Shown one piece after another: positions 28,591 through 60,511 of a stretch of 64,000 nt of DNA. A program made the translations under genes and the position numbers. The notes beneath the pieces were generated by a model. It had not been told where the DNA came from. It saw nothing but the letters and a program-made list of their open reading frames with translations, and searched no databases. Source of the stretch: Mizuhopecten yessoensis (taxonomy: Eukaryota); NCBI RefSeq assembly GCF_002113885.1, contig NW_018404289.1, forward strand, positions 241,750 through 305,749, read 5' to 3'. How positions within the stretch are numbered: the stretch's first letter is position 1; each line of letters starts with the position of its first letter.

Positions 28591-28660
28591 TGTTCAGAAC
28601 ACATTTAACATAGATTCGGTGGAATGTTTGTGTAGACTATGTACTTCGTTTTCAGGCTCA

Positions 28661-31600
28661 ATGGCTGCAGAACGACTGATAGGAAGATACAGAGAGTGGA
28701 CGTTTTTATCACGAAATTGGAATAATAAAAGGTTATTCCAAGTTCATGGCATTCGATCAGTTGGGAAGTCGAGATTTGTGGAAGAATTTTTGAAATTCAA
28801 AGAGGATAGCAAAGAGTGTTATGTGAAGGTGGTGCCGATCAAGGTAAGGACGGTATCTGGTGTAAGAGGGATTTGTTTGTCCTTATTCTCTGCTCTAAAT
28901 CTGTCAGCACCGGAAGATGACACGATCTGGACAGAAACTATATGCAGCACTCTGGCCGGAAGAGGAGATACAGACATCATAATAGTGTTTGACGACGCTG
29001 AGAATATACTAGAGAGGGAAAGCGCAGAAGAGTTCAAACAGTTTTGTAAACATTTGATTGAAAACTGCAGGAATGTCAAAATCATCATCACATCGACAAC
29101 GGAAGTTGTTTTCGAAGACATCGAAGAGCAATGCATGGACCTTCTGATACCTCCTCTCTCGCCAACAGATTCTGAGGCGTTACTTCGTCGTTATGCCCCG
29201 TCCGTGGACTTTGGACCACATCTTAAGACCATAATTGAGTTGTGTGAGGGGTTACCTCTTGCCATCGCCATGGTTGCTTCGGAGCTGACAGGAACCGGAA
29301 GTGACGCTTCCTCTCTGACTGTAGCGGAAATGTCTCTGGCGCTTCAAAACTGTCGTCTTGAGGCCTTAAGTCAGTTCATGTATACACGTAACGAAAGATT
29401 AGGTGAGTATCAAGCTGGTATATCGTTATGATAACTTTCATGTTCTTTTGACTTTAACAACATGCTTATTTTGTCAACAAATCATGTTCAACTTTAATAT
29501 ACTGGTTATATTACGAACTGAAGAACTGGTTTGCTCTATCCATTTCAACTACTTTTTCATTTCTGACTGATTGGTGTCAAATGTTTTCCATTTTTTTCTG
29601 TTCCCGTTGTTGCCTATTTATGATAATACTTAAACCCAATTTTGTCCTTGCGTTGACGCTATTGTATGGTTTTCGGTTTTGCTATACCAAGGAATGGTTC
29701 AAATTCATATTCACATGTTCTTGACTGATACAAAGATGGTTTTCATCATTTTATTTTTTATGAAATGTCTTGATGTTAAGTTCTTATATATATTTTTGTT
29801 AAGAAAAAAATGTAATTTCAATTTAGTCAAAGAGTTTTACATCGTGAGCATATCAATTTATAGACCTTCTATTTTATCAGTATCAAATGTTCTCCCCACC
29901 AGATGCTATATACGGCACGTTCCTGGAACGTTTACCAGAGTCCATGCGACACAAACTGGCCATGATAGGGTACATACCCGGAACGTTTACTCCAAGTCAC
30001 GTGAGGGAGATGATCGGTAAGTATTTGATTAACATATATGACTATCGGAATTTCGTTACATTATCCGCTTTGCATGTCGGTTACTCTTGAAATCGTCGTG
30101 TCATGACCACAATCACAATTGCTCTCTCTTGATCGGGAGGTAGTATGTGACGTGGCAAGAATCACGGATACTGAAAATCCGGTCAAAATGCCACACCATA
30201 AATGTGTTGACTTGTCAGAATTAAAGAAATATAGCATATGGATAGTTAATTGACAATCCAGCCTGATTGATAATTTGAATAATCAGCTTTTATGTCCTTT
30301 GTGTAGATGATCCAACCGTCGAAGAGGCGATGGAAACTACCATTACGCCATTGATAAGACGACATTTTCTGAAACAGGACGACATCACACAGCGATACGA
30401 TATACAAGGGATCCTAAGGAACTGTATTGACGACTTATTGGAGACTGTTAAGAACAGCCCAGGTAGGAACATTACTCACATATTTCATATGAAGGTAAAT
30501 AGCAAATAAGAGGACTTCATAATCCCACTTTCAAACATTCAAATTGTGGCATGTCCTTGTCATATACAAAACAAATATGTTTGAATGTATATGAAACCTA
30601 CATTCTAAGTAGCATGCCCCTCGATCGCTTACTGCCAATATATTTCAAAATCCCGTTTTCTCATTTTTATTCTAGCGTTTCCCTCAATTTTTGCCGACTC
30701 TTTTATAAGACATATATTCTCTGGACATGATGGCAGTATTAAGGGGTTTTACTATATATATTTACGTACTTACTATCTATATTCCCCTATATTTCCAAAT
30801 GGAGTGTTGATGTTATTTTGTTAATGAAATATAAATTCCTACTCAACTTTACTTACTTGTAGAGGCGAAGGAGAGGTTCTGTTTCCTATTTGCCCGTTTA
30901 ATGACGAAAATCGGAAGTATGCTGACAACTTCCGAATACGCAGACGCCCTGTGTCAGTATAACCAAGAACAACAGAACTTCCAGAAGCTTCTAACGAATG
31001 TGGAGCTGGTCTACTCTAACGAAGATATGTATTGCCTGTATATGGAGATAGCGGTCAATGCGTCCAACGTCATCCAGCAGTTCATGGGCGGTAATGTTAC
31101 CTTAACATAATTAGTCAATTCCTACAATACAAAAATACATAAGAACGAAAAACGATTAACTGCTACACAATCGCATTCCATTCTTTTGTCAAACTGTCCA
31201 GTCAATGATTTTAGGAGAACAGTCATAATTTATTATATACAACATTTTTCTGTAATCAAGCCGTTTTTTTTGTATCTATATATAGTTACCATTATTGAGG
31301 TCGACTGGACGGACATGACCTCAGTTTAAATATCTATAATAGGGCAACTCCTATACACACAGCTTTAATATAGGCCTTTATTTGAGAAATATTGGATAAG
31401 ATTTTCATATTTCTTTATTGTTGCATTTCCTACAACTCTCGCACCATTCTGTTTATTTACTTGTTCTCCTAACAGCGTACACTAAAAGGAAATTATACGA
31501 GTAACTTAAGCTGTTGTCATGTTCCCTTCACAATACATGTAATACGACAGTTCTTGGTTCGTTAACCAGTTTTTTTTTATATGTTGCCCAGTTAATTACC

Positions 31601-34265
31601 TTATAAGTAGAAATGCTTTTATGGTCAGTTCAGTAGAGTATGAAAGGAAGAGGATTACAAATTTCACGATATATTGGTAGCGAACTATTAAAGTTTCCCC
31701 CTACGTTAACAGCTGACGGATTCCAGTTCTACCAAGAGCTTACCGTTCTCTCGTCAAAACTGAACAGAAAGCTGGACGAGGCATGTGTTCAGTTGTGTTA
31801 TGGTGGAGCGTTGACCAATGTCAAGGTCAGTGTGACGCCTTGTTCACAATGCATCTCAAACCTGAAAGTTGAATTATCAGCATGAGTTGTAGAAATCATT
31901 TTCCATTTTTTTTATTCATTTCTTTATTAAGGATGAAACAGAGTTTAATTCCTTATTCTTCTTCATCTTTAGATTTTTATTTTGTTTCTATCCCACAATC
32001 CCTATTGAATGTGAACTAGGCATTTCTGGTAGTGAATTACTAGTTCTAAAAACTTGGTACCGTACGTTTTATGTAGATAGCAGCTAAGCTTTCCATAAGG
32101 TACATACTAGTTAAATTGTTTTATTTTTGTTTTTATATAAACTCCGTATTCTGGATGCTCTATATGCTAATGTACATAATATCAAGACAAAATTTAAAGG
32201 GATGTCATATATTTAGGGCATCTCTAAAGAAGGCGAGGCGAAATATCGTCTTGCAATACAGTACTTGGAAAACTACAGGGATGACCCATCGCTGTCATTG
32301 TCCGGTTGCTACCACGGTCTGAGGAAGGACATCCGTTATCATCTGGCAACCTCGTATCAGAGAATGGGGTGGAATCTGTTTATCCAAGGCAGAACAAGTG
32401 AAGCTATCGTGTAAGTAGTGATTTCTTATTTCATACTAAAACTGCTGATCGTATAGCAATGTTTGTCCTGACTCACTGTGTTAATTGTGTAATTTTGGCG
32501 TTATTTTAGTTATCTGGAAAAGGCTTTTGAGTTTGAGAACGAGTTAAAGATGTACACGGACGAACTAATCCTATCTACGTTGATGTCACTTGGAATAACG
32601 CACAACCTCTCTGGTAAGTAATCATATGTACGTAAATCAACGTTCTTCATATTTATACTGTTCAAATTGTCATAAGTTATATTTTCTTCATTTTCATTCT
32701 TTCCAGAATTCATTTCGTTGCTTAGAATCCTTATTGCTTTAATTTATTTCCTAAGTGAAAGGATCTGATTCTTTCAGCACCATGACCTATAATAGATTAA
32801 AAACGTGTAAACTCCATACGAAATACCTCTATCTATAAATGCCTATGTATAAATATTGAGGAAATATCCGAACTTTACCAGAAAAATGACTTTCCAATAC
32901 TTGTATATAAAACTGCTGAGGATCTCTTACAGATAAAAAATTGTATTATATCGTCCAATATTGTACATTTTGTATTTCATTAAAATATTTGTTATACAAA
33001 TGTACCAGAAATGTGTCATAATAGCGCTCATACCACCAGAAATATTGACATCTTATTTTTATACAATCTTTCCCTATATTTTGCAATATATACTCAATGC
33101 ACTACTTTGTATTCTTATCTAGAGCACACAATCCTCAGTGAAACGATCTTGATATGTCGACTACTGGTTTACGGCACTTCACTTTTTTGTTTTTGTTTTG
33201 GTAAATACTGTCCGCTTTAGACATTTATTTGTAAAGATTTTTTATTTGGATATTAATTGCCAAAAACTGTTTTTTTCGATTGATATTAATTGCCAAAAAC
33301 TATTTTTTTGGATGGATATTGATTTCTATTGGCTATTTTTCATCGTGGAACTATTAAAATTAGTGTTGTCTTTTATTATTGAAAAAAAGGACAAATGAAA
33401 ATGCACTTTTTTTACATCCCCAGAGAACATGAGCGTCGCTCTTCGGTATCACGAAGAAGCTCTTCGCCGGAGGAAACAACTTTACAAAACTCCAGAAGAT
33501 CCTGAGGGGGAAAGACATCCTGCTATTGGATCCTGCTACAACAACATGGGACTGACATACCGTAAGATGGAACGCAAGGACGAAACGCTCTACTATTTCA
33601 AAAAGTCATTGGAAGTAAAACAGAAAACCAAAGCCCCACAAAAATCTGTCGCGATATCGATTATCAATGTTGCCAGTGCTCTTTCCGAAACAGGAAAGCA
33701 TAACGAAGGTATGCTTATGTTACGAGATGCAACGGCAATTTTAAACAAGACCCCAAATATTTATCAAGACACAAAAGCTTTAGTATATGCAACGGAAGGC
33801 CAGATCATGCTCCGCAAGAAATGCTACAAAGAAAGCATTAAGCTCTTCAAGAAATCCTTATCCATTCGCAAGCACAGCGGCCCTAACAACTTTTGGTCAG
33901 GAGAGACATACAACGACCTCGCTAAGGCATACATTGGTCTCAATGATAGCAGACAGGCTCTTTATTGGCTGAATAAAGTGTTCAGTCTGCAAGAGGAATT
34001 AAAATCAGATGCTCCAACTAATTCGTTCGTGTACGACTGCTACGTTAGAGTCATGGGCGTGCTTGCTGACATTGGCAATTACGACGAGGTTGGTTACGCG
34101 TTTAATATTGCATTGCAAGAGCTGCAGCGCTTACGCGTGGAGTTCACTGCCTTGGGCAACGCTACCAAGATAGCGTGGGTAGATTCTGAAAGCAGTTCGC
34201 TTCCTGGAGTCTTTACCCGTCTGGTTCCCTGCACCGATCAGTCACAGCCACTGTGTGTCCAGTAG
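28661..34265 (+). CDS. Gene 1: STAND (NB-ARC-like) NTPase - winged helix - TPR protein, 830 aa; join(28661..29402,29903..30016,30307..30462,30863..31090,31713..31825,32217..32410,32510..32613,33424..34265)
   Basis: All seven introns are GT..AG and splicing gives one open frame of 2493 nt. Motifs: LIGR pre-P-loop, Walker A GIRSVGKS, Walker B IIVFDDAE, IIITSTT (sensor-1 position), PLSPTDSEALL, CEGLPLAI (GxP), RYDIQGILR (MHD position), KLC/TPR_12-like HPAIGSCYNNMGLTY. Candidate AATAAA at 34811. An acceptor at 28655 implies an unseen upstream exon. Confidence 0.88.
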
Positions 34266-35227
34266 ATACAGGTTACACAACACCATTGGTGAACTGTGTT
34301 AATTGAAGACCGTATAACAAATATGGGTGAGGCTGAATATCATACCAGATTTTTTTATGAACCGACGCACGCTCCAAAACCTCGAAATTTCATTCAGTTT
34401 AAAAATTAACTAAATCGAGTCAGATATACATGATATCCAACCTGCATGCAAGTCGCGTGTAGCATAGAAGTTAGCTCTCACACGCGAGATTATTTCTTTT
34501 GGACATACATTTACTGATAATATGGTTTCATTTTTTTGTACCCGTATGATGTGTTTATATATTCTCCCTTTAAATAATTTGTGAAACTACCATCATACGG
34601 ACGTGGATATAATCCAAACATAGCTTATTTTGACTTGTTGATTGAAATATTAATCTGTTTTTAAAATACTGTCTCGCTGTTTCTCAACTTTCTATAACGT
34701 ATGACGTCGTGTCGTTTTCATCAAGAAGACAATAAGCAGGACCTTGACACAATGAATAATTCATGTTTTGCGCATTTTCTCCGCTCTTGAGCTCTAAATT
34801 ACATATTTGCAATAAATTTCTTTTGTCGAAAACATTAACTTTATTTGGCTTTCTCTATCGACGAACTCAGTATTTAAATAGGTATTTCCTTAGTTCGCAT
34901 CTCTAGAATGTTTCCCATCGAGTGATGGTTGGTTATCATGTTTATCTAATTCGAGTAAGTTAATTTTCATGTTGTGTAAAGACACGATTTTAAAGTGTCT
35001 TTTAACAATCTACAAACTAACTAAGGAGAGTTAGATAAACATGATAATCAACCATCACTTGTTTAGATACATTTTCTTCCACAACGCCAAGATATTAAAT
35101 CTAAAAAATCTAATTTTTCTCTTGGAATACATTATTCCCGTTCGGGGAAACAATTGCCATGAGTTTTTACATGACAAAGCATTGTTACTTGATGTCGTTA
35201 TTTGAGGATTGACCAATGAAATAACGT

Positions 35228-37765: not shown

Positions 37766-37939
37766 GTTGGCAGCGAGGAAATCTATGGTGGCTTTGGGAG
37801 AAAGTAATTTGACCACCGTAATATGTTACAACACCTACAAAATCGACCAACTGATATGACGTGTATAATAACTAAACAAATAGGAATTGAAATGATTATA
37901 CTGTATCTTTTGTGTCGGAAATTCCATGGAATCTTTCGC

Positions 37940-38570
37940 TATGGATTACCGAGTTAGCTTCCCTTGTAATAACCACATCCATTGTGTGACCATGGGTGTG
38001 TTTAGTTTCTGTCACATGGTGAATTAGACCCCTGGAATCTAGTAGCCCAGAGAACTGACTAGTATTAACATAAGATATATCTTCTAAGTGGAAATATAGG
38101 TCACATGTGATAATAATCCCTTGTGGTACAACAACTTGGTGGTTTAAAAAGATAGAGCACTAAAAAAAACCCACAGTATTTCGGAAACCGTTCTGTTTAG
38201 ATTGAACAGACCTGTAAATGATACACAATTTGAATTGTTTATCACCAGCAATGACAGAACAAGTCACGTGCTCAAAATGTGTGCCTAAATCATCATGGCT
38301 GGAATAGAGATGTCTAACACTTAGGCCTTTCTTAAACAGACAAGCGACCACACCACCACGACTGTTGAGTCTAGCATTGTGAAGGAATTCTTATCCTCCT
38401 ATTGTTATTAGCTCAACTAGTACCTGGTCATCGATATGGGAATCCAACCAAGTTTCTGTTAATGCCAGAATATCAATGTCCTGAGATGTTACAACATTTC
38501 CGATGGACAGTGACTTGTTCTTCAACGAGCGACAGTCCAATGACACTAGATTCACAGGAATAGCTGACTT
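37940..38570 (-). mobile_element. Degenerate non-LTR retrotransposon (CR1/L2-like) ORF2 apurinic-endonuclease fragment
   Basis: Minus-strand translation gives LDCRSLKNK, DILALTETWL, RGGVVACL, CIIYRS, IIITCDLYFH (GDFN motif) and HGHTMDVVITR (GHTLD motif), with internal stops. Confidence 0.85.
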
Positions 38571-41390: not shown

Positions 41391-41583
41391 TCAAGGTTTC
41401 TGCAAAAAATATGAGTTTTGTTTAAATTATTGAAGATCGTTTTGAAACCCGTAGATTTTTCGGGGGAACATGAAGGGACTTTCTACGTCATAGAACATCT
41501 GAACCTCTAAAGCTTCTCACAGACGTCATATATACCATTGAGGATACATACGGGGCCTTTTTGGAACTATAGCCCTCAGAGGG
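41391..41583 (+). pseudogene. Decayed copy of exon 4 of the STAND-TPR family (relic of a fourth paralog)
   Basis: 41513-41554 encodes LLTDVIYTIEDTYG and is 39/42 nt identical to gene 3 exon 4 (LLTDVMYTTEDTYG). Flanks align with the RFCK, VDSSEYLEG and ELALR segments. It carries a TAA and indels and is preceded by ctttag. Confidence 0.8.
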
Positions 41584-42094
41584 AAATATGGGTATACTTG
41601 CCTGTGCGTTCTATCTTGATATATAGTTGTAACACGTGGTCGTGGTAGCTGTTGATCCAGTGTCCTTTGATCCTTTGTGACTGACATAATTCCTTGATTT
41701 GACAGGGGTACCTCATGTTTTACCTGCTTCCTGTTTCGTAACTATATATTTCCACAAAACAAGGACAATTTTCCTTACAATTGATCCCTCTTACAACAGA
41801 ACATATATAATCTATTTACAAGGGCCCTAAAACAGCTATCTTTAATAGCCTTAAACATGGATCTGATACTTCAGTCGTTTTAGTGTTCACTTGTATGGTT
41901 ATACATATCCGCTTTAAAGTGTCAGTTACGTGGCTTATCACAACCCAAATCTACACCACTACTACATTGTGTAACAACTGTTTTCTACTGAACAGATGTA
42001 CACCCGGCGTTATTTACGAGGAGAGTAAACAGTGTCTGGATAACACCGCCATACCACTAAAGGTATTACATGATACCACACCAAGGTACAAACA

Positions 42095-45000
42095 ATGTCC
42101 ACTCTAAGTGTATTCGTGGGGAGAGAAAGGGAAATAGCGGATATTGTATCTAATTGGCATACAAACAACACATTTTTAGTTTATGGACTACGATCTATAG
42201 GGAAATCAACATTGATTAGAAAATATCTGTCAGTTCTGAAATCGGACACACCAGAACTTACGTTTACCTGGATTGATATGAGATCAATAAAACACCTTCG
42301 CCAGGTGTACATATCTCTGATCGGGTCTCTGTCGTCTTCGGATATTCACATGGAAATCGACTGGATGAACGGAATCGTAGAGTTGATAAAGACAAATGTG
42401 TGTAGCGATCATGTCATCATATTTGATAACGCCGAAGATACCATTGAAGATGGGCGGTGTACTGAATTTCAAAATTTGTGCCAAGTTTGTATCTCCAGTT
42501 CAGAAAAAGTGAAAGTGATCGTTACATCTACAACTGAAATTGGGTTTAAGGACAGTACGTTCTCTTTGACTTTATCTCCTCTATCGACGGAGAGTTCTGC
42601 TGAACTGTTACAAACATGTGCTCCCTCTGTAAACTTTGGAGCCAGCTTGGCGAGCATTGTCGATCTGTGTGGAGGCTTTCCTCTGGCTGTACTGATGACG
42701 GCGTCTATTTTAGAAGACAGAGATACTCTTTTTACACCAAGTGATATGGTCGACTTACTTCAGCTATATCGTCTTAAAGTCCTCAGTCAGGACGTCTATC
42801 AGCGGCAGGAGAGAATAGGTATCTTTGCTCTTTATCCAATGAGTTGCTCTTGCTTCTTGCTTTTTCAAAAATATGCATATTTTTTGTCATTTAAAGTAAA
42901 ATCTGCAGCATGAGATCAACCTATTAAAGATACTATTAGATTTTTAAATGTTATACGTATTGCAGATGTCTGCACAATAACGCCACAATTTCGTGTCAGT
43001 TTAAAATCCATACAGTGATCACATTATATAACGGTTTTAAGTAACAATAAACCAGGATGTTTCTAACTAATTCGCTTATGATATTAAAACTTTATAATTG
43101 GTGGAATACACAAATAGTATGGTAAACAGTTGCGTTTCTATCTTATGCACAGATTATATGATAAACCATGACGATTTTAACTAATAAACATGATTAATCA
43201 GGACATTTATTAGTAATACACAGCTAAACAAAACAAAAAAACCCAAATGATTTTTCTTAGTAAAACAAATCTAGAACGATAAACCATGGCTTTGTAATAC
43301 ACGGATAATGTATTACACAGAACGTTAAAATGTAGTATGACACACCATATCGTTTTAATAGACAAATAGATAAAACATGACATGTTTTACTGGTAATACT
43401 CTGAAACAGGATAACTCAACAATTCAAATTAAAATTAACAACACTTTAATAAATCAACAAAAAAAGTTCCATCACAACAACTGCCTTGGCAAACCGGAAA
43501 AAATACAACCGTGATTACAATAGGTTGCCGGTATTAAGGTACAAAAACAGTACACTCAGTTTACATAGAACCCGTATGTTAGGTAATAACCGCGGGAAAA
43601 CCCAGCGCGGTAAATTCAAATGCTCTTATTTCTGTTTCACACAAAACCATCTTATAAATCCTGTCATACCTTGACACAAAGATAGCACGGAGAACCGTAA
43701 CGTTTCAAACTGATAAACAGAAAGTATGATAAAAAGCCTTTTTATTTGATACAAAGTTTTTATTCTGTTTGTTAAAAATAAAATATCATAAATCTTGAAG
43801 TTTCTAACTAGTTCGAAGATTTTTTTTATTATTGACTTACTGTATGACATGCAACATTTGGTGTTACCTAATTTTGCGGTTTACGTTTATAAATCATTCC
43901 GTTGATACGACTTTTCGCGTGTGGCCGTACACGTTTACATGAGATTTATAAGTTGTACATATTTTCACTTAATTCAATCGTAAGTGCGACAGCCGAGAAT
44001 ATCAGTCCATGGAAACAGGTACATATACTACAATGTGTTACAGTGGAATGTATTTTATTTTCATTTTTGGCAAAATGTTTGGTAAGGTAAAAAAGTGGCA
44101 TGGTCAATCGATTTGCTGTATAAAATATACTGAACAAAAAAAGAAACGGTTTATATTGTAGTTGATGAAATAATAAACATATCCTGATTATGGATTTTTT
44201 TGAAAAATGTATTCATGTTTATGTTATAGTATGTGTTCTGAATGCTAACTACACACATTGATTGTTCCTAGCAATTGTGTACGGAGAATTCCTAAAGAGA
44301 CTGAGCGGGATCCTCACAGGAAGGCTATCCATTATCTGCTATATCCCTGGATCATTCACGATAGAACAAGTAACGGAGATGATCGGTAAATATCAGATAA
44401 ATATAAAAATCAATAATAACAATGCCTGTACATACTTGATACAATGCTTATACAATCTATACTCTGTTTATGATCGCCATCCGATTGATCTCGTTACCAG
44501 GTTGTTATGCTGTAGCATCGCATTGGAGGAATTAGAGATCATCTATATGCATTTGGTTACTTTTCTCGATCCGTACCACACGTATGCGCTCATTACACAT
44601 TTAATTATTTCTTAGAAATAAATATTATGTGTATACAAAGTTTCTGATAATTGCCCAAAATTTTGTGACGTCACAATATCTATCAGTTGATGGTGATGTC
44701 GCAAGATATGTGGGATTTGAGGCTGCTGGAGTAAAAATGCGCTCACAGGACCATCCATACTTATTTATTGCAAATATATCGTTAGTTTAGATATACATGT
44801 ATGAGTAATGTAATATCTCCAAAGGTTAATTAACAATAATCTTTCAACCAATTATTAGCTATAATGATATACGAAACGCTGTAAGTAAACACATTCTTGT
44901 ACTTTTTGTACCTATATGTAATATACTATGTCAACACTGAAAGTAACATATAAAACAGGTAACTTGTCTTACTTTTTTTTGCATTTAATTTGTTTTCACA

Positions 45001-48000
45001 GTAAGCACAAATGTGTCGTAATTATGACTTTATGTAATTATTTGTAACTATCAATGAGGTACAAAAACTGATAAACAGTATGGACACTATACAAATACTT
45101 GAAAAATAAACTGTAAACAATTAACATACACAAACCATGATCAAAATGCAAGTAATTAACACTAAAGGTATACAGGCATCTGACAGAGTAATGAACAGTA
45201 TGTTAATTGTGAAGAATATGCAAACCCTATAACAATATGCTTGCGCTTTGAATATAGTTAAATGAACAATTTTAATCCAAACGTATTTACTAGGACACAA
45301 AACAGACGGAGAAACAAAGAGGTTGACCCTTGACCCGGTGATGCGTCATCACGTGGTACACTATGACCAATCCACACGTCGTTACGATGTGCATGGGTTG
45401 CTCCGAGACTGCATAGAAATGTTTGAGGACACCAGACATCTCCCAGGTAAGTTTACTGATGACGAAAAATAGTAAGCAATATCGACCTTATGTCTAAATT
45501 ACTGTGCTAATATTTTTGTCAAGCAAGCGCTAAACCGGACTGCAAGACTGCCGTGCGAAAAAGGAAAACAAAACTATGTAAGCTTTGTATTGTTATGATG
45601 TAATTTTAGACAGGTGTCTTTCATACAGGTTTCCAAGTAAACAAATATTTTAATAGCTGGTCGTATATACTTCATGGTATTTCCACGTTGTATGGTTACA
45701 AAACTGTTTCCTGTAGCCTGTTAGTAGTTTCCTGTTGATTATTTATTCAAGCGTCAGCAGATTTCTAAGACAAGTGTCTAACACTGAATAAGATTTGGGG
45801 TTCCGTTTTTTTCAAACTGTCTTTTAGGAATATGAGTTTTTTTGTATAAATTATATCAATATGGAAATTTTTGATCACGGAACACGCACTTTATTTTCAT
45901 CTTCGCGCAGGCTGTTGCTTATGTAACAAGGTCGAAAGGTCTTTAGCCGTACAATTTGCTAGAGATATCCGATTAGGGATTGTGTGTGGTTTTTTTTTTA
46001 CTTTTATGAAGCTTGAAATATATCTATTTAAGTATAAACATTTATGTTACATTTCAAACCACTACCAGATATTTTATACTTGTATGTGTTAAAAATCCAT
46101 CTTAAAATTTAAGTTGAGACAGAAAAACTTGGGTAAAATAAATAACAAAATTATTTTCCAATTTTGCAATGTTAAATTCCAAGGTATATATAGTATTTCG
46201 TAACCACATACTATATATCCTCATGTTTCGACAAGCGCTACCGTAAATCATTCAGAAATGTGTCTAATTTCAGAAACAAGGAAGCGGTTTTGTAAGGTGT
46301 TCGCACGGCTTATGAACGCCATCAGTGAGAAGGTAGATTCTTCCGAGTACCTGGAGGGACTGTGTCTGTACAACTTAGAACGTCAGAACTTCCAGAAACT
46401 TCTTACTGACGTCATGTATACCACTGAGGATACATACGGGCTCTACATGGAACTGGCCCTCAAGGNGGGGGGGGGGGGGGGGGGGGATCAAGCTGTCTTT
46501 CTTTTGGCGATTAATCCCTCGGCTCTGTTTGAAGTCTGCTTCCACAATGAGAAGTATACTAACGAATTTGTAACATAATTTCCAAATTCATATAGTAATT
46601 TCAATTTTACACAAACGTTCTTTTAAAATATATTATAATTTATACACGTTTGGCATATCCGTTGAATTCATATTTTAATCATTCATACCTTATAAGTCAT
46701 TACTATCTCCCTCGAAACACATTTGCGAAGACTAATAAATGTGGCTCCTTCTATTCGCTCGGGCGTCTCCGCATTCTGGGCAACAGCTCAAAAACCATTT
46801 CATATACATTATCTCTTCAAACCTTGCATACACAGCAGGCTAGTGCCCTAGTTGCATTGTTTGATATTATTCAATTGCTATTTTCAAAATCTTTTCTGTT
46901 ACAATGGAAACAAATTGTCAAAAATAATTACAAAATTCAGAGTGTCGGAGCTTTCCCGGGCAACAAGTTTAATTACATCTAACATGTGTCTAAAAGAGAG
47001 AGTGTACGCGTACCGGACTAGTGCCCGAGGTCTTTCCTCTGACCATATAAACACAGTCAAAACTTCAAATTCAGTGTTTCAAAGCATTTCCGGATATCTA
47101 CTGTCAAACTGTTCCATATATCCTTATCAAGTTGGTAAACCTAAAAGTCTAGTGCTCCCAAAAATGAAAATGATTTACGAACCTTTCCTCAAATCTCGTC
47201 TAAACTGGAAACACCTGTAAGATCCTGTACAATCTCACCGACTGTGACTAAGATTGCGCTGTACACTTACGCAATTGAAGAACTGGTCGTGTTTTTCTTT
47301 ACATTTCCAGTCGATATATTTAGAAATAAGTAAGTGTATATTCTTTGCTTGAGTAAGTGATTCATGAAAGCTCGTTTTATAGAATTCATATATAATGGAA
47401 ACATGATTTAAATCTATAAATATACACAAGTATAATGTGATGTCGGGCATCATTGGATGATATGTGTATATGTCCACTAATCAATCGTGAAACTTTACAT
47501 GTAGGTGGGTGTTTTAGCTTCCTTCCTCATCTCCATTTTAAGAGGTTGTTTCCGTGGACCGAGTGCTTGTATAACACTTATAACATTGCCTTGTAATGGA
47601 GATCCTATTTCGACCTCTTGCCTATGACGATAAAAATATAGTAATACTCGTCTTCCTCCTTTATAGATACGGGTGTGCAGTTTTACCAGGACCTGATGGC
47701 GTTATGTCGGAATAACAAAAACCTTGTGGACGAAGCTTGTGTCCGGATCCAGTTCGGGAGCATGCTCACAAATGTCAAGGTCTTTTTTGTCTTTCATGTT
47801 AGATCTACAGAATATACACACACATATAACGTTGCCCAACAAATGCGGATTGGTCGCCATTTTCAGTCGCGTGCCGGTGTATATGAACGATATTTTCCGC
47901 TCCTATTCCATAGGTGTTACACTTTTCATTTATTATACTTCTATTTTAAATTATATATAATGAATATCAAACTGCATTGTCACTTTAATGATGTAAATCG

Positions 48001-50435
48001 TGCAGAACTTGAACAAATGAACAGTCCACGGTTATAGGTGGCTGATCAACATGTCAACATTGATTGATGAGGTTCAGAATTGTTTCAACTTACAGTCGAT
48101 ATGTTTATACAATCTTTATTACTTGAATCAAACTAGCAAAACAAAAAGTATAAACTTCATTTATTTCACAACAATTATGAAACAAGTTATTTCAACTTAT
48201 ATTATTCACTCTTGTTGACCCGGATGTTAGCGCGTGGGGGTCTTAGTATGGGAGGAAACCGGAGTACCCGGAGAAACCCCACGTGGTCGGGCAGACCGCC
48301 TTGGTGAAAGGCAAGTGCGCTATCCACTGCACAACCCGACCACCCTGAAAAACAAAACAATTTAAAAGTTGATCAGAGATTTTGTTTTTAGGGAACAACA
48401 TCGCTAGCCGAAAAAAACTATTTCATCGCTTTAGACGTTTTGAATGAAGTCTCCCAGAGCAGCCCATCAGGACAAACAGGTGATAAAGTCGTACGTAGGT
48501 CATTGGCGTTGGTCTATCAGAGGATCGGATGGAACGTAGGCAGTCAGGGACGATGGCAGGAAGCCCTGGTGTAAGTTTTATCTAATTAAAGGTTTAAAGT
48601 TCAAAAAAATAATTAAAGTACCAAAATTTCACAGTGTCAAAATAGAAAGACATAACAGTGAACTATAAAAAAAAGAATATTGTATTGGAGTCATTTTTCC
48701 CCGAATATGACAACGTTTTATTGCATTAAATTTGATATTTTCCTGCTCGAAGATTTACTTTTATTACTTGTTTGTATATATGGGGTCGGCTAACCCTTTC
48801 TTTATATTGTGTGAAGGTACCTGGACAAAGCTTTCCACCTGGAGCAGGAATTACATATGTATTACGAGGAACTTGCCATATCAACTATTCAATCTTTATC
48901 TGTATTTAACACCTTTCTGGGTGAGTAAAGTAGCAATATAAATATAACAAAATCGGAACAGTACCCAAATCGAATTGATCACTTTTTTCAAAAATACTTT
49001 TAAATCAGCAGGTGTCAGCAGTTCAAATAGTACAATGATATACAGACAAGCATCAATTTTGGCTACAGATGATTACATTTTAGTTCTTACATCAGAAGAC
49101 TATTTCAAACGCAAAAATGAAGTTTTGTAAGAGGGCTTTGTATGCTGTTGGGACTGTAGGAATAAATTCAGCCTATAGAAATACTTGAATTCACATAAAT
49201 GCCAAAGTTCATCATAAAATGTTGAAATGCTGAAAAAAAGTTCATTTAAAGCGTAAGATATTGCAGAATTCAAGTCATGATCCGATTTTGATACTGTCAT
49301 TTGCAAACACCGAAAAAATGCTAATTGGTGAGTCAAAGTGTTCTATAAAAGTATCCAATACCCGTCGATATTTTTCTTATGATGCAACCGTAAATGAATA
49401 TAATAAATCATTTTAATTTTTAATGAATGAATAAAAACGATGGTTTGGTGATACGGTTTGGGTACTGTCACTTTAGATAATGATGTATATTTGTTATTTC
49501 GATTAAATGTTGAAGGAATTAAATCCTGTCTTTATTAATGTTCGGTATCGAAACATTTAACGCTGTAACATGAAAAAAATACATCCATTTTTATTCTCAT
49601 CTTATTATGCATAGGCTATTTTTAAAACATCTTTACAGGTAATCTGGAACTTGGATTGAAATTTAACAAGGAAGCATTTAGAAGAAGAACTGCCTTTTAT
49701 GGGACGGAGGAACATCCAAATGTGGCGACACTTGTCAACAACCTAGGGCTCATCTATCGTAGACTAGGTCAGAAGGACACGTGTCTGGAGTGCTTTATGA
49801 ACGGATTACGTCTGAAGCGTAAAACAAAGGCTACAGCTAAGTCTATTGCAATATCCTTGGAGAACGTAGCACTGGCTTTTACTGACAAAGGCGACCACGA
49901 CCAGGCACTCAATTATTTAAAAGAAGCATATGATTTGCTAGATAAGACTCCAAATCTTTACAGGGACAATAGGGCATATGCGTATTCCATTGAAAGTGAG
50001 GTTTTACAAAAACAAGCCCGACACGCTGAAGCCATATCAAGACTTAAAAAAGCAGTGAACATCATTGTTCGTGAGGCCCCTGATGAAATCTTTACAAGCA
50101 AACTGTATTTTGAAATAGCGAATTCCTATTTCGCACTGGAGAACTACCCAAAAGCTATAGCTTTTTGTAACAATGTGTTCAATTCAAAACATGTACTTCT
50201 AAGGGAGGCTCCGACATGTGACCGTCTGTTCCAGTCTTGCAAGACCGCCATACATTGTCATACCAAACTAGGAGACGACATAAACAGACGGAAATGGTAC
50301 GATGAAGCAACAAGGGAGGCAACTCGCCTCATACAAATCTTCAGGAGTTACGGAAAAGACGAAAAAGTTTCAATAATTACGAACGAACTTCGGTCACTTC
50401 AGAAGCGATTTGAAAGTGACGTAGAAAGTAACTAA
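42095..50435 (+). CDS. Gene 2: STAND (NB-ARC-like) NTPase - winged helix - TPR protein, ~801 aa; join(42095..42818,44272..44385,45294..45446,46274..>46465[gap],47667..47779,48392..48570,48817..48920,49639..50435)
   Basis: Same exon phases as gene 1, with equal lengths for exons 2, 5 and 7 (114, 113, 104 nt). Motifs: FVGRE, GLRSIGKS, VIIFDNAE, VIVTSTT, CGGFPLAV, RYDVHGLLR, HPNVATLVNNLGLIY. Exon 4 is cut by N + poly-G at 46466; the length assumes a 222-nt exon 4 as in gene 3. In-frame TGA at 42071 upstream of the ATG. AATAAA at 50531. Confidence 0.82.
46466..46486. other. Assembly gap (single N) followed by 20 G
   Basis: Literal n at 46466 followed by a G run; it truncates gene 2 exon 4. Confidence 0.9.
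48205..48345 (-). mobile_element. tRNA-derived SINE with V-domain-type core, in intron 5 of gene 2
   Basis: Reverse complement has a tRNA-like head (GTGCAGTGGATAGCGCAC) and GGTTTCTCCGGGTACTCCGGTTTCCTCCCA, matching the V-SINE core. Confidence 0.75.
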
Positions 50436-54832: not shown

Positions 54833-57800
54833 ATGGGATTTGTTGGTAGAAAAGATGAATTGATGGAACTAAAAAGTGAGTTTGACTCAAAAGACATATT
54901 TGCTATATATGGATTGCGTTCTGTTGGAAAATCTCGACTTGTGGAAACTTTTATAAATCAGCTTTCATGGAGAAGTATTTGGATCGACATGGGAAACATG
55001 AAGAGCATGAGACCAGTGTATATGACCTTACTTCAGAGACTACTACCAGATAGCGTCTCAGCACAACGCGGTATTTCTAGAACACCTACTGTCGCTGTCG
55101 AGGACTGGTGGACCGGTATTCAGAGTATTATCAATGAGGGTGTGTCAGAGCCCACTGTCATTGTTCTAGATAATGCTGAAGACGTGGTGGAGACAGAAAG
55201 AATTGCGATGGAATTCCTTCAAATGTGCGTTCTTCTTACATCTACCTCGAGAAGTATTAAGGTGTTCGTAACATCTACAACGGAAATGTCGTTTGATGAA
55301 AACAGCATGATTTCCTTATTTTCATTTCATCTGAAAGCTTTGGATCAGGAAAGCTCGGCACAACTTCTTTCAGCTAATGCACCAACCGTTAACTTCGGAT
55401 CCAATATGGCGACCATCGTAGAATTATGTGAAGGTCTTCCTCTTGCGCTGTTGATGACGTCATCGATTCTTGAGGACAAAGAATCATTGTTTGCTGCTGG
55501 CGATATGGTCCGTCTCCTTCGTTTATGTCGTATGGAAGTTCTGAGTCAAGCTTTGTATCAAAGAAAAGAAAGAATAGGTATAATAACATATATACATTCT
55601 ACTGTCTTATGAATCATTGGTGTGCTTTAAATTAAAATAGTGTATTTATAAAAAGGAGCTACATAACGTATGAAAAGTTTTTATTAGTAACGAGATATTA
55701 CATTAAATAACACGGCCTTTTCGAGCCAAAGAATAACATGTAAATCATACCAAATCTACATAATCTTGTCTAAAATCTTTAATTATTTGTGAAAACTTCA
55801 ATACAATAAATTAATTATCGTTGAATATGTAAAAGCAAGTGTCTGATATCAACGTAAAAAATTATCAGGATTTATTCTCAAAAATAATTCGTTTTTTGAC
55901 AGGCAATGTCTATGGGGAGTTTTTACGACGACTTTCAGTGTCTCTGAGAAACGATCTCGCTACCTTGGTGTATATACCCGGATCGTTTACAGACTCTCAG
56001 GCGAGCGCAATGATCGGTGAGTCTATTTTGGAAATATCTGTGTACAACAAAACGTTAATGTTGAACAGCAATATGGGATCATAAGGGAGTCTTATATAAC
56101 TAAATATTTTGGTATTTAATACAAGAGGCAATCATGATGCAAAAATTAAAAAAAATCTGCGCATCAACCTATAAAAGCAGAAAACAAAGTACATGTTTTT
56201 GTGAAGTCGTAATAAGGGAAACAACTCTTACATTCCTGAGTAGAAATGGTGTGTTTAGGATGTTCAAGGTCGTGCATTTTCGTCGTTTGGTACTTAAAAT
56301 GTCTGACATGGACTTAATCTCTATTTGGCTATGGTGATTTTATTAATATACCCATACCTCGGCGAAGCAACAAAACCCGTAAAATAATAACAGTCTATGT
56401 AAGATGTAATACAGCTCTTATCTTCAAAGACATCAGCAGACGAGCGTTACATGTCCTTTGTCGTCACTTTAGCGGCCGTATTTCTTGACGATTTTTTTTT
56501 ATACTTCGGATAAGATTGACTAAGGACATCATCGATTAAACGTCAAAACCACTGTAACTAAAATAGAAATTCATCAACACAACCATAGGACGCTGGCAAT
56601 TCTACCCTGTTTTTTTTTTTTTTTGAAGGTCAAAGAAAAAACTTCATGTGGTAAAGATGGTAACAGTTGACAGGGATTTATATTTTTAACATATATTGGC
56701 TTTTACAGGAAACACGTCTAACAAAGAAACCCACATAACCACAATACAACCGATAATGCGGCGGAACATCATCCACCACATCCGGGGTACGGATCGGTAT
56801 GACGTCCACGGGATACTGCGAGACTGCGTGGCTTTGTATCTGGACGTGAAGAATCTCCCAGGTAAGCCATGCTTTTTGTTTTTTGCAGAGAGCAAAAACG
56901 TTTAAAGGAAACCTTAAGGTAGAAATAAAACAGTACTTATACTTGGACTTGGTCAGTAATTGCTTACTTTGTTTGGCTTCATGCATCGACTTTTATCGAA
57001 ACCGAAATTTCTAAAAGGCATCTGTGCTCCCCTACTTTATATTTCTAACAATACTTTTAAATCATACAGTTTAAAAAACTGACAGGGAACTTAAACTATT
57101 AATAAACAACAGATACACCTTTACAATACTGACTTTCAATTATTGTTAATTGATGTTTTTTCATTTGAAGAAACAAGGAAACGGTTTTGTAAGATTTTCG
57201 CACGGCTTATTATCGCTATCAGTGAGAAGGTAGATTCTTCCGAGTACCTGGAGGGACTGTGTCTGTACAACTTAGAACGTCAGAACTTCCAGAAACTTCT
57301 CACTGACGTCATGTATACCACTGAGGATACATACGGGCTCTACATGGAACTGGCCCTCAGGGCGACACACGTCATACAGAGCTTCATGATAGGTAATGTT
57401 ATATATATGTCACGGATGGTCCTAGTTCGTGATATCTACCATCGAGTGGGTAATTATTTTATCATAATGATATGTTATAAAGATTTTCTGTCTTTGTTAC
57501 TTTCGCAATAAATATTGGTTTTCAGTTACGTTTTCGTAAAATTAACGTAAATTTGGTATCCCACATAGCATCCATATGTTTGCAATGTGAGTTTTAATGC
57601 TACTCCTGAGATATACTGGTCGTAATACCTATCGAATATATAATTTAGCATCTCAGTCAGTCGAATTTACAAATTAGTTATGAAGGCATCAGCGGGAAAT
57701 AATGAGCGTAAATTGGTATCAAGGCATATGCCTCCATTAGATAATTCAATATCCATTTTATTCATAACGGCCTTTTTAAACAAAACATTTCTCGAAAGGA

Positions 57801-60511
57801 ACGATTGTGATTTATGTGTGGTCCGGTGTCAATTTTTAAATTCCGCCATGTTTCAGTTATATTTTCCTGTTCATATCATGGAATGCTGCTGCGCATATTT
57901 CTGAGAATTATTTGATGGTCGTTATATTTTCAGAATATGATTTCAAATTCTACACCGAGCTGATGCGAATGTGTCGTAACAACAAGAACTATGTGGATGA
58001 AGTTTGTATCCAGATACAGTACGGCAGTGCACTCACCAACGTCCAGGTAAGCTTGCTATCCGATGTGTATGTCACCAATGTAGGGTGCATTTTTCTTAGT
58101 GATAATCATTCCAGCTAAATCAATAAATATATTAAAAATATATATAATGGATCAGTTGATTTCTTTTGTTTTTAGACCAAACGTATTTGCTATGCAATGA
58201 ACTGTAAACAGGAAACTGTTCACGCGTCACAAAGATAACTCCTGTGACTTTAACAATACAATATCACGTCTAATTTTTCTAAACATTTTCTTCCGGTTGG
58301 TAAGTATGTATGGAAAATAGGCATACGCTTCATTGGTCATTTGTCTGATGAAGGTGACAGTGGACATATCGTACTAGTCATCGAAACGTCACATATTTTT
58401 TTTTTATTGGTTGTGTAAAATGAACTTCTCATAATCACGTCCGATTGTCTATACAGGGAGATAACTCCTGTGACTTTAACAATACAATATCACGTCTGAT
58501 TGTCTATACAGGGAGATTTAATGACTGGTGAGACGAACTATATGAAAGCTTTGACATTTCTTGAACACAACTCGACCAACGATTCCACACGGGACCTTCG
58601 ACCAATAATGGCCTTGGCCTATCAGAGAATCGGATGGAACATCGGTTGTCAAGGCCGGTGTCAAGAGGCGTTAAGGTCAGCTAAGTTAGCAATGATTTGT
58701 CGCGAACTAAAAGAGTGCGAGTTTAAAGGAGCTGTCAGACTAAAAGTAACAATGTGGCTACATTTATCAGATTATCATCATGTACATAATTATGGAACAA
58801 GTTTTGAAATGAATCGTATTTAGATAAAGGCTATGCACAGTTTCTCCATCAACAAATTATATTTCTGAACAGAAACTTGCGTTAAGAACTATTGAACTAC
58901 CATAAATGTTTTCTGAAGATAACAAGCTCGTGGTTCAAATGGTCTCTTTTCTGTTTCAGATATCTCTATAAAGCCTTGAAGCTAGAACAAGATCTAAACA
59001 TGTATTATGAAGAACTTGCCATGTCAACAATACAAAGTTTGTCCTGTTTCCATGTCACTTCCGGTAAATACCGCACTGTGTCCTCTATCATCAATACTGT
59101 CGGTCAATCTACGATTTGTAACCGTAGACATTCTAAACTTCTAACGATTAACAAAATATGGCGTTTTGGTATGGAACTTCGTACATATTTTAATGATAAC
59201 ACTGCTGATAGATTCCCTAAAAAATCAGGTGATAGCATACTTACCAGGTTTGAATTTAATCCAGTAAAAAGAGGTCCTTGGGAAGTTGTTTTTATCTATA
59301 AATGAAATGAAAAATATTGTTCAAATATATTTAGTCTTTTTAATCATTCATTTATCTGTATGTTGTTGCTGAGCGTTCTAACTCGCCCTTTCCTTTTTTC
59401 AATTGATATTACACCCTTTTTTCAATTGTTGTTACAAAAGTATTACTTTCAAAGATAGAAGATAATGGTACCCCATAAAGGATTGATCAAGTATGTAAAA
59501 ACTGTACAATAACTAACATGGGAACTATTTCTATTTTCGAAAAAACTTAAAATGTAAATGTTCATTAGCCTCCCATACATAAGATCTAACAGATATAACA
59601 GCTGACTGATATTACTTCATCAGTGGAAACTTGCCTATCTGTTGAACTTAATTTGGTATTTCTTCTGTTTAACAACAGGTAACGTTAAGGAAGGTATCAA
59701 ATTACATCAGGAAGCTTTAAAGAGAAGAATCGAGTGCTACAAAACTGACCAACATCCATATGTTGCTTCCTGCATCAACAATTTAGGAATTGCCTACAGA
59801 AAGTTGGGGCAAGAGGAAGAGGCTTTACACTGCTTCCAGCGAGCGCTTGTCGAAAAAAAGGACACCAAAGGAACGGGGAAATCTATCGCAATATCAATGA
59901 AGAATGTAGCTTGGTCACTAACTGAGTGTGGTAACCACGTCGAGGCTTGGGACAAGATCGAGGAAGCATTCAGCATCCTAAACAAAACCCCAAACCTATA
60001 TTTAGAAATTCGGTGTTACTGTCATGCTGTGGAGGGCAGAATACTACGAAATACTGGACAGGATGAAGAAGCAATTCAGATATATAAGATGTCTCTAACA
60101 ATTGCTAAAAGTCATGCTCCTGTGTTTTTGTTTGAATGCATGATTCATTTGGAAATAGGAGAGCTTCAGTTTAAAAGAAAACGATATGATATCGTTCTCA
60201 AAAGGCTGGAACATGTATTTAAAGTTGGTCCTTCGCTGATTTCCGAAGATCCCTCCTCTGACATTTTGATCGACTCTTATGTCGTGGCCATAGATTGTCA
60301 CGTAGCGTTACGTGATATGTATATGGCTACGCTCCGTGGTACATATGCTGTCAGAGAAATTGAAAGGTTACTGCAAGTTTGCAATGATTTTGAACTTGAA
60401 GACAAGATTACGACACTTAAAAAACGTGAATATGAACTGAAAGAAAAAATAAGGAATATGAAAATGATAGAATTTAAAGATCAATCTAAAACGAGCAATT
60501 TACCAAATTGA
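54833..60511 (+). CDS. Gene 3: STAND (NB-ARC-like) NTPase - winged helix - TPR protein, 815 aa; join(54833..55577,55903..56016,56709..56861,57171..57392,57934..58046,58512..58675,58960..59063,59679..60511)
   Basis: GT-AG introns with the same phases give 2448 nt of open frame. Motifs: FVGRK, GLRSVGKS, VIVLDNAE, VFVTSTT, CEGLPLAL, RYDVHGILR, HPYVASCINNLGIAY. The frame stays open upstream to a candidate acceptor at 54761, so the start could lie in an upstream exon. Confidence 0.87.

What the first reader, a model, noticed from the sequence alone, without database searches (positions are those of the whole stretch)
42071..42208. Apparently 'headless' STAND receptors with no N-terminal effector domain
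In all three genes the first ATG lies only 2-6 codons before the (F/L)(V/I)GR motif that opens NB-ARC domains. Gene 2 has an in-frame TGA 24 nt upstream (42071). I found no CARD, DD, TIR, nuclease or pore-forming exon upstream. Effector-less STANDs usually act as sensors needing a helper (as NAIP does with NLRC4) or as decoys, which would imply a partner encoded elsewhere. Caveat: genes 1 and 3 have phase-1 acceptors (28655, 54761) with open frame into the ATG, so an unseen 5' coding exon is possible.
Basis: partly seen in the sequence, partly recalled or inferred. Interest (0 to 1): 0.7.

Follow-up and report, generated by a model that had tools for sequence, protein, structure and literature searches.

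The report
Scallop NB-ARC–TPR genes truly lack heads
Three neighbouring scallop genes encode switch-type ATPases (NB-ARC plus TPR repeats) that start right at the ATPase domain with no signalling "head". This is real and is the conserved state of a small, uncharacterised animal gene family, so it is a sound but fairly ordinary finding.

Summary
The window is Mizuhopecten yessoensis (G000:C962). It carries three tandem 8-exon genes of about 805-830 aa, each NB-ARC NOD + helical arm + TPR.

**Starts.** The first ATGs (28661, 42095, 54833) lie 5, 6 and 2 codons before the (F/L)(V/I)GR motif. Gene 2 has an in-frame TGA at 42071.

**Gene 2, RNA evidence.** A spliced cDNA contig runs unspliced from 41802 through the TGA and ATG to the donor at 42818. 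It then joins exon 2 at 44272 (GT-AG). Three raw RNA reads show the same junction. No coding 5' exon feeds gene 2.

**Gene 1.** It has a conserved non-coding 5' exon with an in-frame TAA at 26657.

**Gene 3.** The Ylistrum orthologue has a stop 27 nt upstream of its ATG and no AG in between.

**Family.** RefSeq models and orthologues in Pecten and Ylistrum start at the same Met. 62 of 64 close relatives (molluscs, nemertean, hemichordate, echinoderms) are equally headless. Only the amphioxus members examined carry a DED. No DED, Death, CARD or TIR_2 match lies on the contig.

**Selection.** dN/dS of 0.10-0.22 in both NOD and TPR exons argues against decoys.

The "sensor needing a helper" idea stays untested. 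This is a new member of a known kind, of moderate-low interest.

The parts
41802..42094 (+). Gene 2 5' leader (minimum extent), unspliced. It holds 4 uATGs and the in-frame stop.
   Evidence: cDNA contig of run X1 (1095 nt) is colinear with 41802-42818 with 1 mismatch. uATGs at 41857, 41895, 41996 and 42070.
42071..42073 (+). In-frame TGA 24 nt before the gene 2 start codon
   Evidence: Sequence and frame walk. It lies inside the transcribed, unspliced leader.
42095..42818 (+). Gene 2 coding exon 1. Start codon 42095, FVGR 42113-42124, Walker A 42185-42208, GFPLA motif. Ends in phase 1 at the donor 42818|GT.
   Evidence: ORF. Pfam NB-ARC 28.4 bits. The junction 42818>44272 is seen in the X1 contig and in 3 raw RNA reads of X21. 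The loose end matches 44272-44301 exactly. GT and AG intron ends.
44272..50435 (+). Gene 2 exons 2-8 (arm and TPR). Approximate positions: 44272-44387, 45266-45445, 46267-46464, 47666-47779, 48392-48571, 48818-48919, 49626-50435. A single N at 46466 abuts exon 4.
   Evidence: tblastn with the Pecten maximus orthologue P0168 covers residues 1-796 except 395-404, which fall at the N. TPR_12 and related Pfam hits on the last exon. The N was not filled and the exons were not joined.
26540..26681 (+). Putative non-coding 5' exon of gene 1. Conserved donor CAG|GTGAGG at 26681/26682. In-frame TAA at 26657-26659.
   Evidence: Conserved with Ylistrum L011:8181-8314, including the donor. In the frame set by the acceptor at 28655, a stop precedes the donor and no in-frame ATG follows it, in both species. 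Inferred; no RNA was laid here.
28661..34265 (+). Gene 1 CDS (LOC110442765, 830 aa). Acceptor at 28655, ATG at 28661, exon 1 to about 29402, last exon 33423-34265.
   Evidence: The RefSeq protein P0169 maps at 95-100% identity, starting at 28661. NB-ARC 35.6 bits. The Ylistrum orthologue P0002 starts MAERLIGR.
54833..60511 (+). Gene 3 CDS (LOC110442801, XP_021342269.1, 815 aa). ATG at 54833, exon 1 to about 55580, last exon 59663-60511. Upstream in-frame TGA at 54728.
   Evidence: P0001 maps at 100% identity from 54833. NB-ARC 39.4 bits. AF2 model with pLDDT 89.9: NBD 1-170, HD1 172-236, WHD 248-330, all-helical 336-810.

Best explanation
The three genes, plus a fourth paralogue on contig C4112, encode complete, expressed STAND ATPases of about 805-830 aa. 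Translation begins 2-6 codons before the hhGR motif that opens the NB-ARC nucleotide-binding domain. The rest of the protein is NBD-HD1-WHD, a helical arm and a TPR solenoid. There is no fused effector at either end. This is the conserved, probably ancestral, state of a small family found in several bilaterian phyla. It is kept in scallops as a syntenic set of orthologous genes under purifying selection.

Inferred mechanism, not shown here: like other NOD-arm-TPR STANDs, the protein rests as an ADP-bound closed monomer with the TPR packed on the NOD. A ligand or partner bound by the TPR releases it, nucleotide exchange follows, and the NOD oligomerises. Output must then be made in trans, by proteins recruited to the oligomer or to the TPR, because no death-fold, TIR or enzymatic domain is fused. 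Whether the pathway is immune, apoptotic or housekeeping is open.
For: **RNA, gene 2.** The X1 cDNA contig is colinear with 41802-42818 and spliced to 44272. Three X21 RNA reads show the same junction. The in-frame TGA at 42071 sits inside that leader.

**Gene 1.** A conserved 5' exon with a conserved donor carries an in-frame stop in both scallops.

**Gene 3.** The Ylistrum orthologue has TAA 27 nt upstream of its ATG and no AG between them.

**Models and orthologues.** RefSeq models start at the same ATGs. The Pecten and Ylistrum orthologues keep the same Met.

**Family.** 62 of 64 close relatives (at least 100 bits) have the motif within the first 40 residues. The two exceptions are a fused tandem model and a model with an 83-aa extension that has no Pfam match. 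Transcript contigs of two relatives have in-frame stops 21-27 nt upstream. A quick tree puts 82 of 86 rows of the family group as headless.

**No head domain nearby.** The N-terminal extensions of distant relatives give no tblastn hit upstream of any gene. No DED, Death, CARD or TIR_2 match lies on C962 or C4112.

**Fold.** AF2 pLDDT 89.9, pTM 0.81, NOD plus an all-helical remainder. The best Foldseek match is 6mfv (PH0952 NOD-arm-TPR), followed by Apaf-1, NRC3 and CED-4. The profile also hits 6mfv (8e-19) and NRC1.

**Selection.** dN/dS is 0.10-0.22 in NOD and TPR exons.
Against: - Only gene 2 has direct RNA evidence, from one assembled contig plus 3 reads. A contig cannot show the true 5' end or exclude rare isoforms.
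- For gene 1, use of the conserved 5' exon is inferred from conservation, not seen in reads.
- For gene 3 in this species, 11 AG dinucleotides lie between the upstream stop at 54728 and the ATG, so a coding 5' exon is not excluded by sequence alone.
- Gene models of relatives come from similar pipelines and could share a bias.
- The mechanism is by analogy only. The Walker B reads DNAED and sensor-1 lacks Arg (TSTT), so even ATP hydrolysis is uncertain.
Confidence: 0.8

Rival explanations
1. Sensor-helper reading. The headless proteins are immune sensors that, once activated, nucleate a separate helper STAND or adaptor carrying a death-fold or TIR domain, as NAIP does with NLRC4 or plant sensor NLRs do with NRCs. 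This is a special case of the best explanation.
For: The architecture lacks any effector. The amphioxus relatives P0069 and P0086 carry a DED, which links the wider family to death-fold signalling. The genome encodes many free death-fold and TIR domains elsewhere: 26 DED, 84 Death, 65 CARD and 123 TIR_2 matches.
Against: No candidate helper lies in the cluster or on the contig. All four single-exon NB-ARC genes detected in the genome are headless. The genes are stable 1:1 orthologues with dN/dS 0.10-0.22 and no excess TPR divergence, unlike typical fast-evolving pathogen sensors. No expression or infection data were examined.
Confidence: 0.25
2. Missed 5' coding exon. One or more of the genes has an upstream exon, or an alternative promoter isoform, that adds an effector domain. 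On this reading the headless look is an annotation artefact.
For: Gene 1 has a strong, conserved acceptor 5 nt before its ATG. Gene 3 has an open frame of 105 nt with several AGs before its ATG. Only gene 2 was tested with reads.
Against: The gene 2 leader is unspliced for at least 293 nt and carries an in-frame stop. The conserved 5' exon of gene 1 has an in-frame stop in two species. The gene 3 orthologue leaves no room for an acceptor. There is no similarity among the three upstream regions. Known heads of relatives give no hit upstream. No death-fold or TIR HMM match lies on the contig. 62 of 64 relatives are headless.
Confidence: 0.06
3. Decoy or decaying copies. The genes are truncated remnants of once-headed receptors and now act as non-signalling decoys or pseudogenes.
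For: The Walker B second acidic residue is replaced (DNAED) and the sensor-1 Arg is absent (consensus). Ylistrum seems to have lost an intact gene 2 orthologue, leaving only a fragment.
Against: Frames are intact over all exons. Gene 2 is transcribed and correctly spliced. dN/dS is 0.10-0.22. The same motifs are family-wide consensus across phyla, so they are not recent decay.
Confidence: 0.04
4. Non-immune scaffold. The proteins are housekeeping regulatory switches or TPR adaptors, comparable to nephrocystin-3-like or kinesin-light-chain-like TPR proteins, with no role in defence or cell death. This is also compatible with the architectural part of the best explanation.
For: The family is small (4 genes), old and under purifying selection. 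The TPR part is most like KLC, LGN and OGT TPRs. NCBI names some relatives nephrocystin-3-like. Transcript fragments of gene 2 are held by runs of at least 6 studies, which suggests broad low expression.
Against: The NOD is of the Apaf-1/CED-4/plant-NLR type. Relatives carry DED, Death, HEPN and CHAT heads, which are typical of defence and death systems.
Confidence: 0.3

Closest known systems
PH0952 of Pyrococcus horikoshii and MalT-type NOD-arm-TPR STANDs (PDB 6mfv; PMC6468293)
   Same: Best structural match over the whole length (Foldseek E 7.7e-13, 740 columns) and best NOD match by profile (8e-19). Same order of NOD, helical arm and TPR sensor, with the NOD beginning at the hhGR-type motif.
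   Different: [quoted passage not shown] The crystallised form was the N-terminally deleted protein. The scallop proteins have no effector at either end. Identity is about 15%.
Apaf-1 / CED-4 / Dark (animal NB-ARC apoptosome proteins)
   Same: Pfam NB-ARC above cut-off. NBD-HD1-WHD fold matches Apaf-1 and CED-4 (TM by target up to 0.67). GxPLA motif present.
   Different: No CARD. TPR instead of WD40. Walker B reads DNAED and sensor-1 has no Arg. A single-sequence search finds no PDB relative.
DED/Death-NB-ARC-TPR proteins of amphioxus, sea urchin and cnidarians (PMC2246300, PMC7642931, PMC6321704)
   Same: Same NOD and TPR core. Amphioxus P0069 (DED-NB-ARC-TPR, 982 aa) nests inside the family in the quick tree.
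   Different: Those carry an N-terminal death-fold domain. The scallop genes and nearly all mollusc, nemertean, hemichordate and echinoderm members do not.
NAIP-NLRC4 and plant sensor/helper (NRC) NLR networks
   Same: Conceptual only: a receptor without its own executioner domain that would need a partner.
   Different: NAIP is NACHT-LRR with BIR domains. Plant pairs are NB-ARC-LRR. No helper was identified here, and the genes are not fast-evolving.

Membership tests
NB-ARC (AP-ATPase) clade of STAND NTPases | Pfam PF00931 match above the gathering score | tested here: met
   35.6, 28.4 and 39.4 bits against a cut-off of 23.5 for the three first exons. 36.1 bits for P0001.
NB-ARC (AP-ATPase) clade of STAND NTPases | Walker A GxxxxGK[ST] and the GxPLA (GLPL) motif | tested here: met
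   G-x-R-S-x-G-K-S and C-x-G-x-P-L-A are invariant among the three genes and across 25 family members.
NB-ARC (AP-ATPase) clade of STAND NTPases | Canonical Walker B hhhhDD/DE and sensor-1 Arg | tested here: inconclusive
   The first Asp is conserved (D113 of P0001), but the next residue is Asn (DNAED). The sensor-1 region reads TSTT without Arg. The catalytic consequence was not tested.
NB-ARC (AP-ATPase) clade of STAND NTPases | NBD-HD1-WHD fold | tested here: met
   AF2 model with pLDDT 89.9. Foldseek matches to Apaf-1, CED-4, NRC3/4, ZAR1 and Roq1.
Canonical tripartite NLR / Apaf-1-like receptor (effector-NOD-repeats) | N-terminal effector domain (CARD, PYD, DED, Death, TIR, BIR, CC) | tested here: not met
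   The CDS starts 2-6 codons before the NOD. No Pfam head in 18 close relatives. No DED, Death, CARD or TIR_2 match on the contig.
Canonical tripartite NLR / Apaf-1-like receptor (effector-NOD-repeats) | C-terminal repeat sensor | tested here: met
   TPR_12, TPR_10 and TPR_1 hits on the last exons. Helical solenoid at 336-810 in the model. It is TPR, not LRR, so this is not a bona fide NACHT-LRR NLR in the sense of PMC3879445.
Sensor/helper NLR pair | A partner STAND or adaptor with an effector domain, genetically linked or shown to co-oligomerise | tested here: not met
   Linkage only was tested. All three cluster genes and the fourth paralogue are headless. There are no death-fold or TIR matches on C962 or C4112. 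Physical interaction is not testable with these tools.
MalT/PH0952-type transcription-factor STANDs | DNA-binding effector domain at one end | tested here: not met
   No HTH, LuxR or ArsR Pfam hit. The model shows only NOD, arm and TPR.

The most novel reading that the evidence does not exclude
An ancient family of effector-less NB-ARC-TPR STANDs, present in several bilaterian phyla, forms its own signalling module. Scallops keep it as a syntenic set of orthologues. Its oligomer would recruit free death-fold or other adaptors in trans. That would be an animal counterpart of plant sensor-helper NB-ARC networks, with amphioxus having fused the DED adaptor onto it secondarily.
Probability: 0.15. 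Interest if true: 0.65.

Novelty: new member of a known kind. Interest (0 to 1): 0.3.

Why it matters
It settles, for one gene by RNA and for the other two by comparative gene structure, that these scallop STAND genes are complete without an effector domain. It also shows that this is the rule for a conserved family across molluscs, a nemertean, a hemichordate and echinoderms. That defines a clean set of animal NB-ARC proteins whose output must be made in trans. They are useful targets for partner screens in bivalve immunity or cell-death research. The result does not reveal a new kind of system, and no function is shown.

Tried and rejected
**Searches that came back blank**
- blastn among the three upstream regions found no shared block.
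- tblastn of 42 N-terminal extensions of distant relatives against the window hit only the NB-ARC and TPR exons, nothing upstream.
- The search for homologous proteins with gene 3 exon 1, meant to fish out transcript fragments, found nothing at E<=1e-40. No cDNA route to the gene 3 5' end was found.
- Single-sequence phmmer of the NOD against PDB gave no hit at E<=1. Only the family profile reached 6mfv and NRC1.
- Genome-wide HMM scans for DED, Death, CARD and TIR_2 gave no match on C962 or C4112. Exon-split domains could be missed.
- The literature searches found no paper on this mollusc family.

**Limits and steps not taken**
- The careful tree did not finish, so only the quick tree with SH-aLRT support was used.
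- Read laying could be run only once, so genes 1 and 3 have no read evidence.
- X15 proved to be genomic DNA, not RNA.
- No complex-prediction job was sent, because no binding claim is made.
- Gene 2 was searched exon by exon, and the family work used database proteins (P0001, P0169, P0168).
Full report
**What the window is.** The window is G000:C962:241750-305749 of a 988-Mb, 82,659-contig assembly. Database proteins that map at 100% identity identify it as Mizuhopecten yessoensis. P0001 is XP_021342269.1 (LOC110442801) and P0169 is LOC110442765. Three same-strand, multi-exon genes lie in tandem. Gene 1 spans 28661-34265, gene 2 spans 42095-50435 and gene 3 spans 54833-60511. In each, a large first exon scores above the Pfam NB-ARC gathering cut-off and the last exon is TPR. 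A fourth paralogue lies on contig C4112. A genome-wide NB-ARC HMM scan found only these four single-exon matches. That count is a lower bound, because genes with split exons are missed.

**The observation.** It is correct as written.
- Gene 2 starts at 42095 with MSTLSV-FVGR. Its Walker A, GLRSIGKS, ends at 42208.
- TGA at 42071-42073 is in frame, 24 nt upstream, with no in-frame ATG between. Only one AG (42085), in poor context, lies in that stretch.
- Gene 1 starts at 28661 (MAAER-LIGR) and gene 3 at 54833 (MG-FVGR).
The one at 54761 is weak.

**RNA test for gene 2.** Twenty public runs hold part of 41000-43000. Laying four runs on 37800-43799 (6,000 letters, avoiding the 59-bp satellite at 35227-37768) gave the following.
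- One 1095-nt contig of run X1 is colinear with 41802-42818 with one mismatch.
- It then continues for 78 letters that match 44272-44301 exactly.
- The skipped stretch 42819-44271 begins with GT and ends with AG, so this is spliced cDNA.
- Three raw RNA reads of X21 show the same junction.
- The transcript therefore reads without any splice for at least 293 nt upstream of the ATG, straight through the in-frame TGA.
- X15 covers the whole stretch at even depth and is genomic DNA.

No coding 5' exon feeds gene 2 in this transcript. A contig cannot show the true cap site or exclude rare isoforms.

Gene 1:
- Comparison with the orthologous locus of the scallop Ylistrum balloti (L011) shows three conserved upstream blocks.
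- One block, 26540-26681, ends in a conserved donor: CAG|GTGAGG here and CAG|GTAGGT in Ylistrum.
- The acceptor 5 nt before the ATG is also conserved.
- In the frame that this acceptor imposes, the upstream exon has TAA at 26657 in Mizuhopecten and TAA at L011:8218 in Ylistrum. No in-frame ATG follows either stop.
- I read this as a non-coding 5' exon. That is an inference from conservation, not from reads.

Gene 3:
- The Ylistrum orthologue (MELIGR) has TAA 27 nt upstream of its ATG and no AG dinucleotide between, so no acceptor can bring in a coding exon there.
- In Mizuhopecten the open stretch is 105 nt (TGA at 54728) with 11 AGs, none in a good context. The RefSeq model starts at 54833.

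Gene 2's Pecten maximus orthologue P0168 starts MSNLDIFVGR, with a stop 60 nt upstream.

**No head domain nearby.**
- The three upstream regions share no sequence.
- The N-terminal extensions of 42 distant relatives give no tblastn hit upstream of any gene.
- None of the 26 DED, 84 Death, 65 CARD or 123 TIR_2 matches in the genome lies on C962 or C4112.

**The family.**
- A profile of the three first exons, searched against 1.84 billion cluster representatives, found 136 proteins at E<=1e-10.
- Among the 64 that score at least 100 bits locally and cover the domain, 62 have the hhGR motif within their first 40 residues.
- The two exceptions are an old oyster model that fuses the TPR of one tandem gene to the NOD of the next (P0053) and a model with an 83-aa extension that has no Pfam match (P0033).
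- Typical members are 790-840 aa.
- Named members come from many bivalves, a gastropod, a cephalopod, a nemertean, a hemichordate, a sea urchin and crinoids.
- Transcript-like contigs of two relatives carry in-frame stops 21-27 nt before the ATG. One of them was seen in 117 contigs.
- More distant relatives (below 100 bits) often have heads: DED in amphioxus, Death, HEPN_DZIP3, DUF4559/HEPN_Swt1, SAM+CHAT, CHAT, and bacterial SARP/BTAD.
- In a quick maximum-likelihood tree, the family group of 86 rows has 82 headless members. The DED-bearing amphioxus P0069 nests among headless deuterostome members.
- This suggests the head was gained in amphioxus rather than lost elsewhere. The careful tree did not finish and the root is arbitrary.

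**Fold.** An AlphaFold2 model of gene 3's protein, built with 25 family sequences, is confident (pLDDT 89.9, pTM 0.81). It shows NBD 1-170, HD1 172-236, WHD 248-330 and an all-helical arm and TPR from 336 to 810, with nothing else. The best Foldseek match is 6mfv, the NOD-arm-TPR STAND PH0952, followed by Apaf-1, NRC3, CED-4, Avs3 and ZAR1. The family profile also reaches 6mfv and NRC1 by sequence. PH0952 was crystallised without its natural N-terminal DNA-binding effector, and that paper states that STANDs generally carry at least one effector domain (PMC6468293). The scallop proteins look like the effector-deleted form, but naturally so.

**Selection.** Nei-Gojobori estimates between orthologues give dN/dS of 0.10-0.22 in both the NOD exon and the TPR exon of all three genes, with dS about 0.85-1.5. 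The comparisons were Mizuhopecten against Ylistrum for genes 1 and 3, and against Pecten for gene 2. These are old, constrained genes. They are neither decaying decoys nor a fast-diversifying receptor array.

**How it most likely works.** Two things are shown here. The genes are complete and headless, and gene 2 is expressed and correctly spliced. The rest is inferred from what is established for NOD-arm-TPR and NB-ARC STANDs. On that model an ADP-bound closed monomer is autoinhibited by the TPR. Binding of a partner or ligand releases it. Nucleotide exchange and oligomerisation follow. Output is made by proteins recruited in trans. The family-wide DNAED Walker B and the missing sensor-1 Arg leave even ATP hydrolysis open.

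**Comparison with the literature.** NB-ARC or NACHT proteins with TPR repeats are well known from cnidarians, placozoans, sea urchin and amphioxus, usually described with Death, DED or CARD heads (PMC2246300, PMC7642931, PMC6321704). I found no paper on this mollusc family, and the databases call its members "uncharacterized" or "nephrocystin-3-like". I therefore class it as a new member of a known kind.

Noticed in passing
window 46272-46465 and 57169-57362: Exon 4 of gene 2 and exon 4 of gene 3 are 95.9% identical over 194 nt, while the rest of the two genes is 67-79% identical or not alignable. The identical patch ends exactly at the single N (46466). This is either gene conversion or an assembly join that borrowed the paralogue.
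   Followed up: partly
window 41451-41579: A decayed copy of exon 4 (about 75% nt identity to both genes; peptide KLLTDVIYTIEDTYGAFLEL) lies about 520 nt upstream of the gene 2 ATG. It sits just before the 5' end of the cDNA contig. It is a relic of a partial duplication, not a head domain.
   Followed up: partly
window 28070-28589: A 57-bp satellite (9 copies, 97% matches) sits inside the presumed 5'-UTR intron of gene 1, ending about 65 nt before the acceptor. Its units carry donor-like GTGG/AGAGTAAG strings. This recalls the splice-site repeats that another note reports for this genome.
   Followed up: no
window 35227-37768, 60996-63363, 20853-22278: Three large minisatellites are present, each of about 43 copies: 59 bp, 55 bp and 33 bp. 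The 33-bp array creates a 390-aa pseudo-ORF (VPGVVGIDVS repeats) with no Pfam match.
   Followed up: no
window 38391-38762 (-): An ORF fragment with an endonuclease-like motif (DIDILALTETWL) looks like a LINE remnant between genes 1 and 2. The DNA run X15 shows raised depth at 38000-38400, which fits a repeat.
   Followed up: no
window 41857, 41895, 41996, 42070: There are four upstream ATGs in the transcribed gene 2 leader. The uORFs from 41895 (70 aa) and 42070 (27 aa) overlap the main start, so translational control is possible.
   Followed up: no
window 28748-29101 and the equivalent parts of genes 2 and 3: Walker A has an Arg (G-x-R-S-x-G-K-S), Walker B reads DNAED, and the sensor-1 region is TSTT without Arg. 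These are consensus features of 25 family members across phyla, not a scallop peculiarity.
   Followed up: partly
L010:213-569 (= L011:18623-18979), Ylistrum balloti: Between the Ylistrum orthologues of genes 1 and 3, only a 39%-identical fragment of gene 2's first exon was found within the stretches fetched. The gene 2 orthologue may be lost or degraded there, while Pecten maximus keeps it.
   Followed up: partly
window 19853-20216: A 366-nt block is 71% identical to Ylistrum L011:2182-2526, about 8.5 kb upstream of gene 1. It has no ORF of 50 aa or more. It may be a conserved non-coding element or an old repeat.
   Followed up: no
window 41661, 42052: The genomic DNA run X15, from another individual, has 15-nt and 5-nt deletions in the gene 2 leader and about 2-3% substitutions across the intergenic region.
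   Followed up: no
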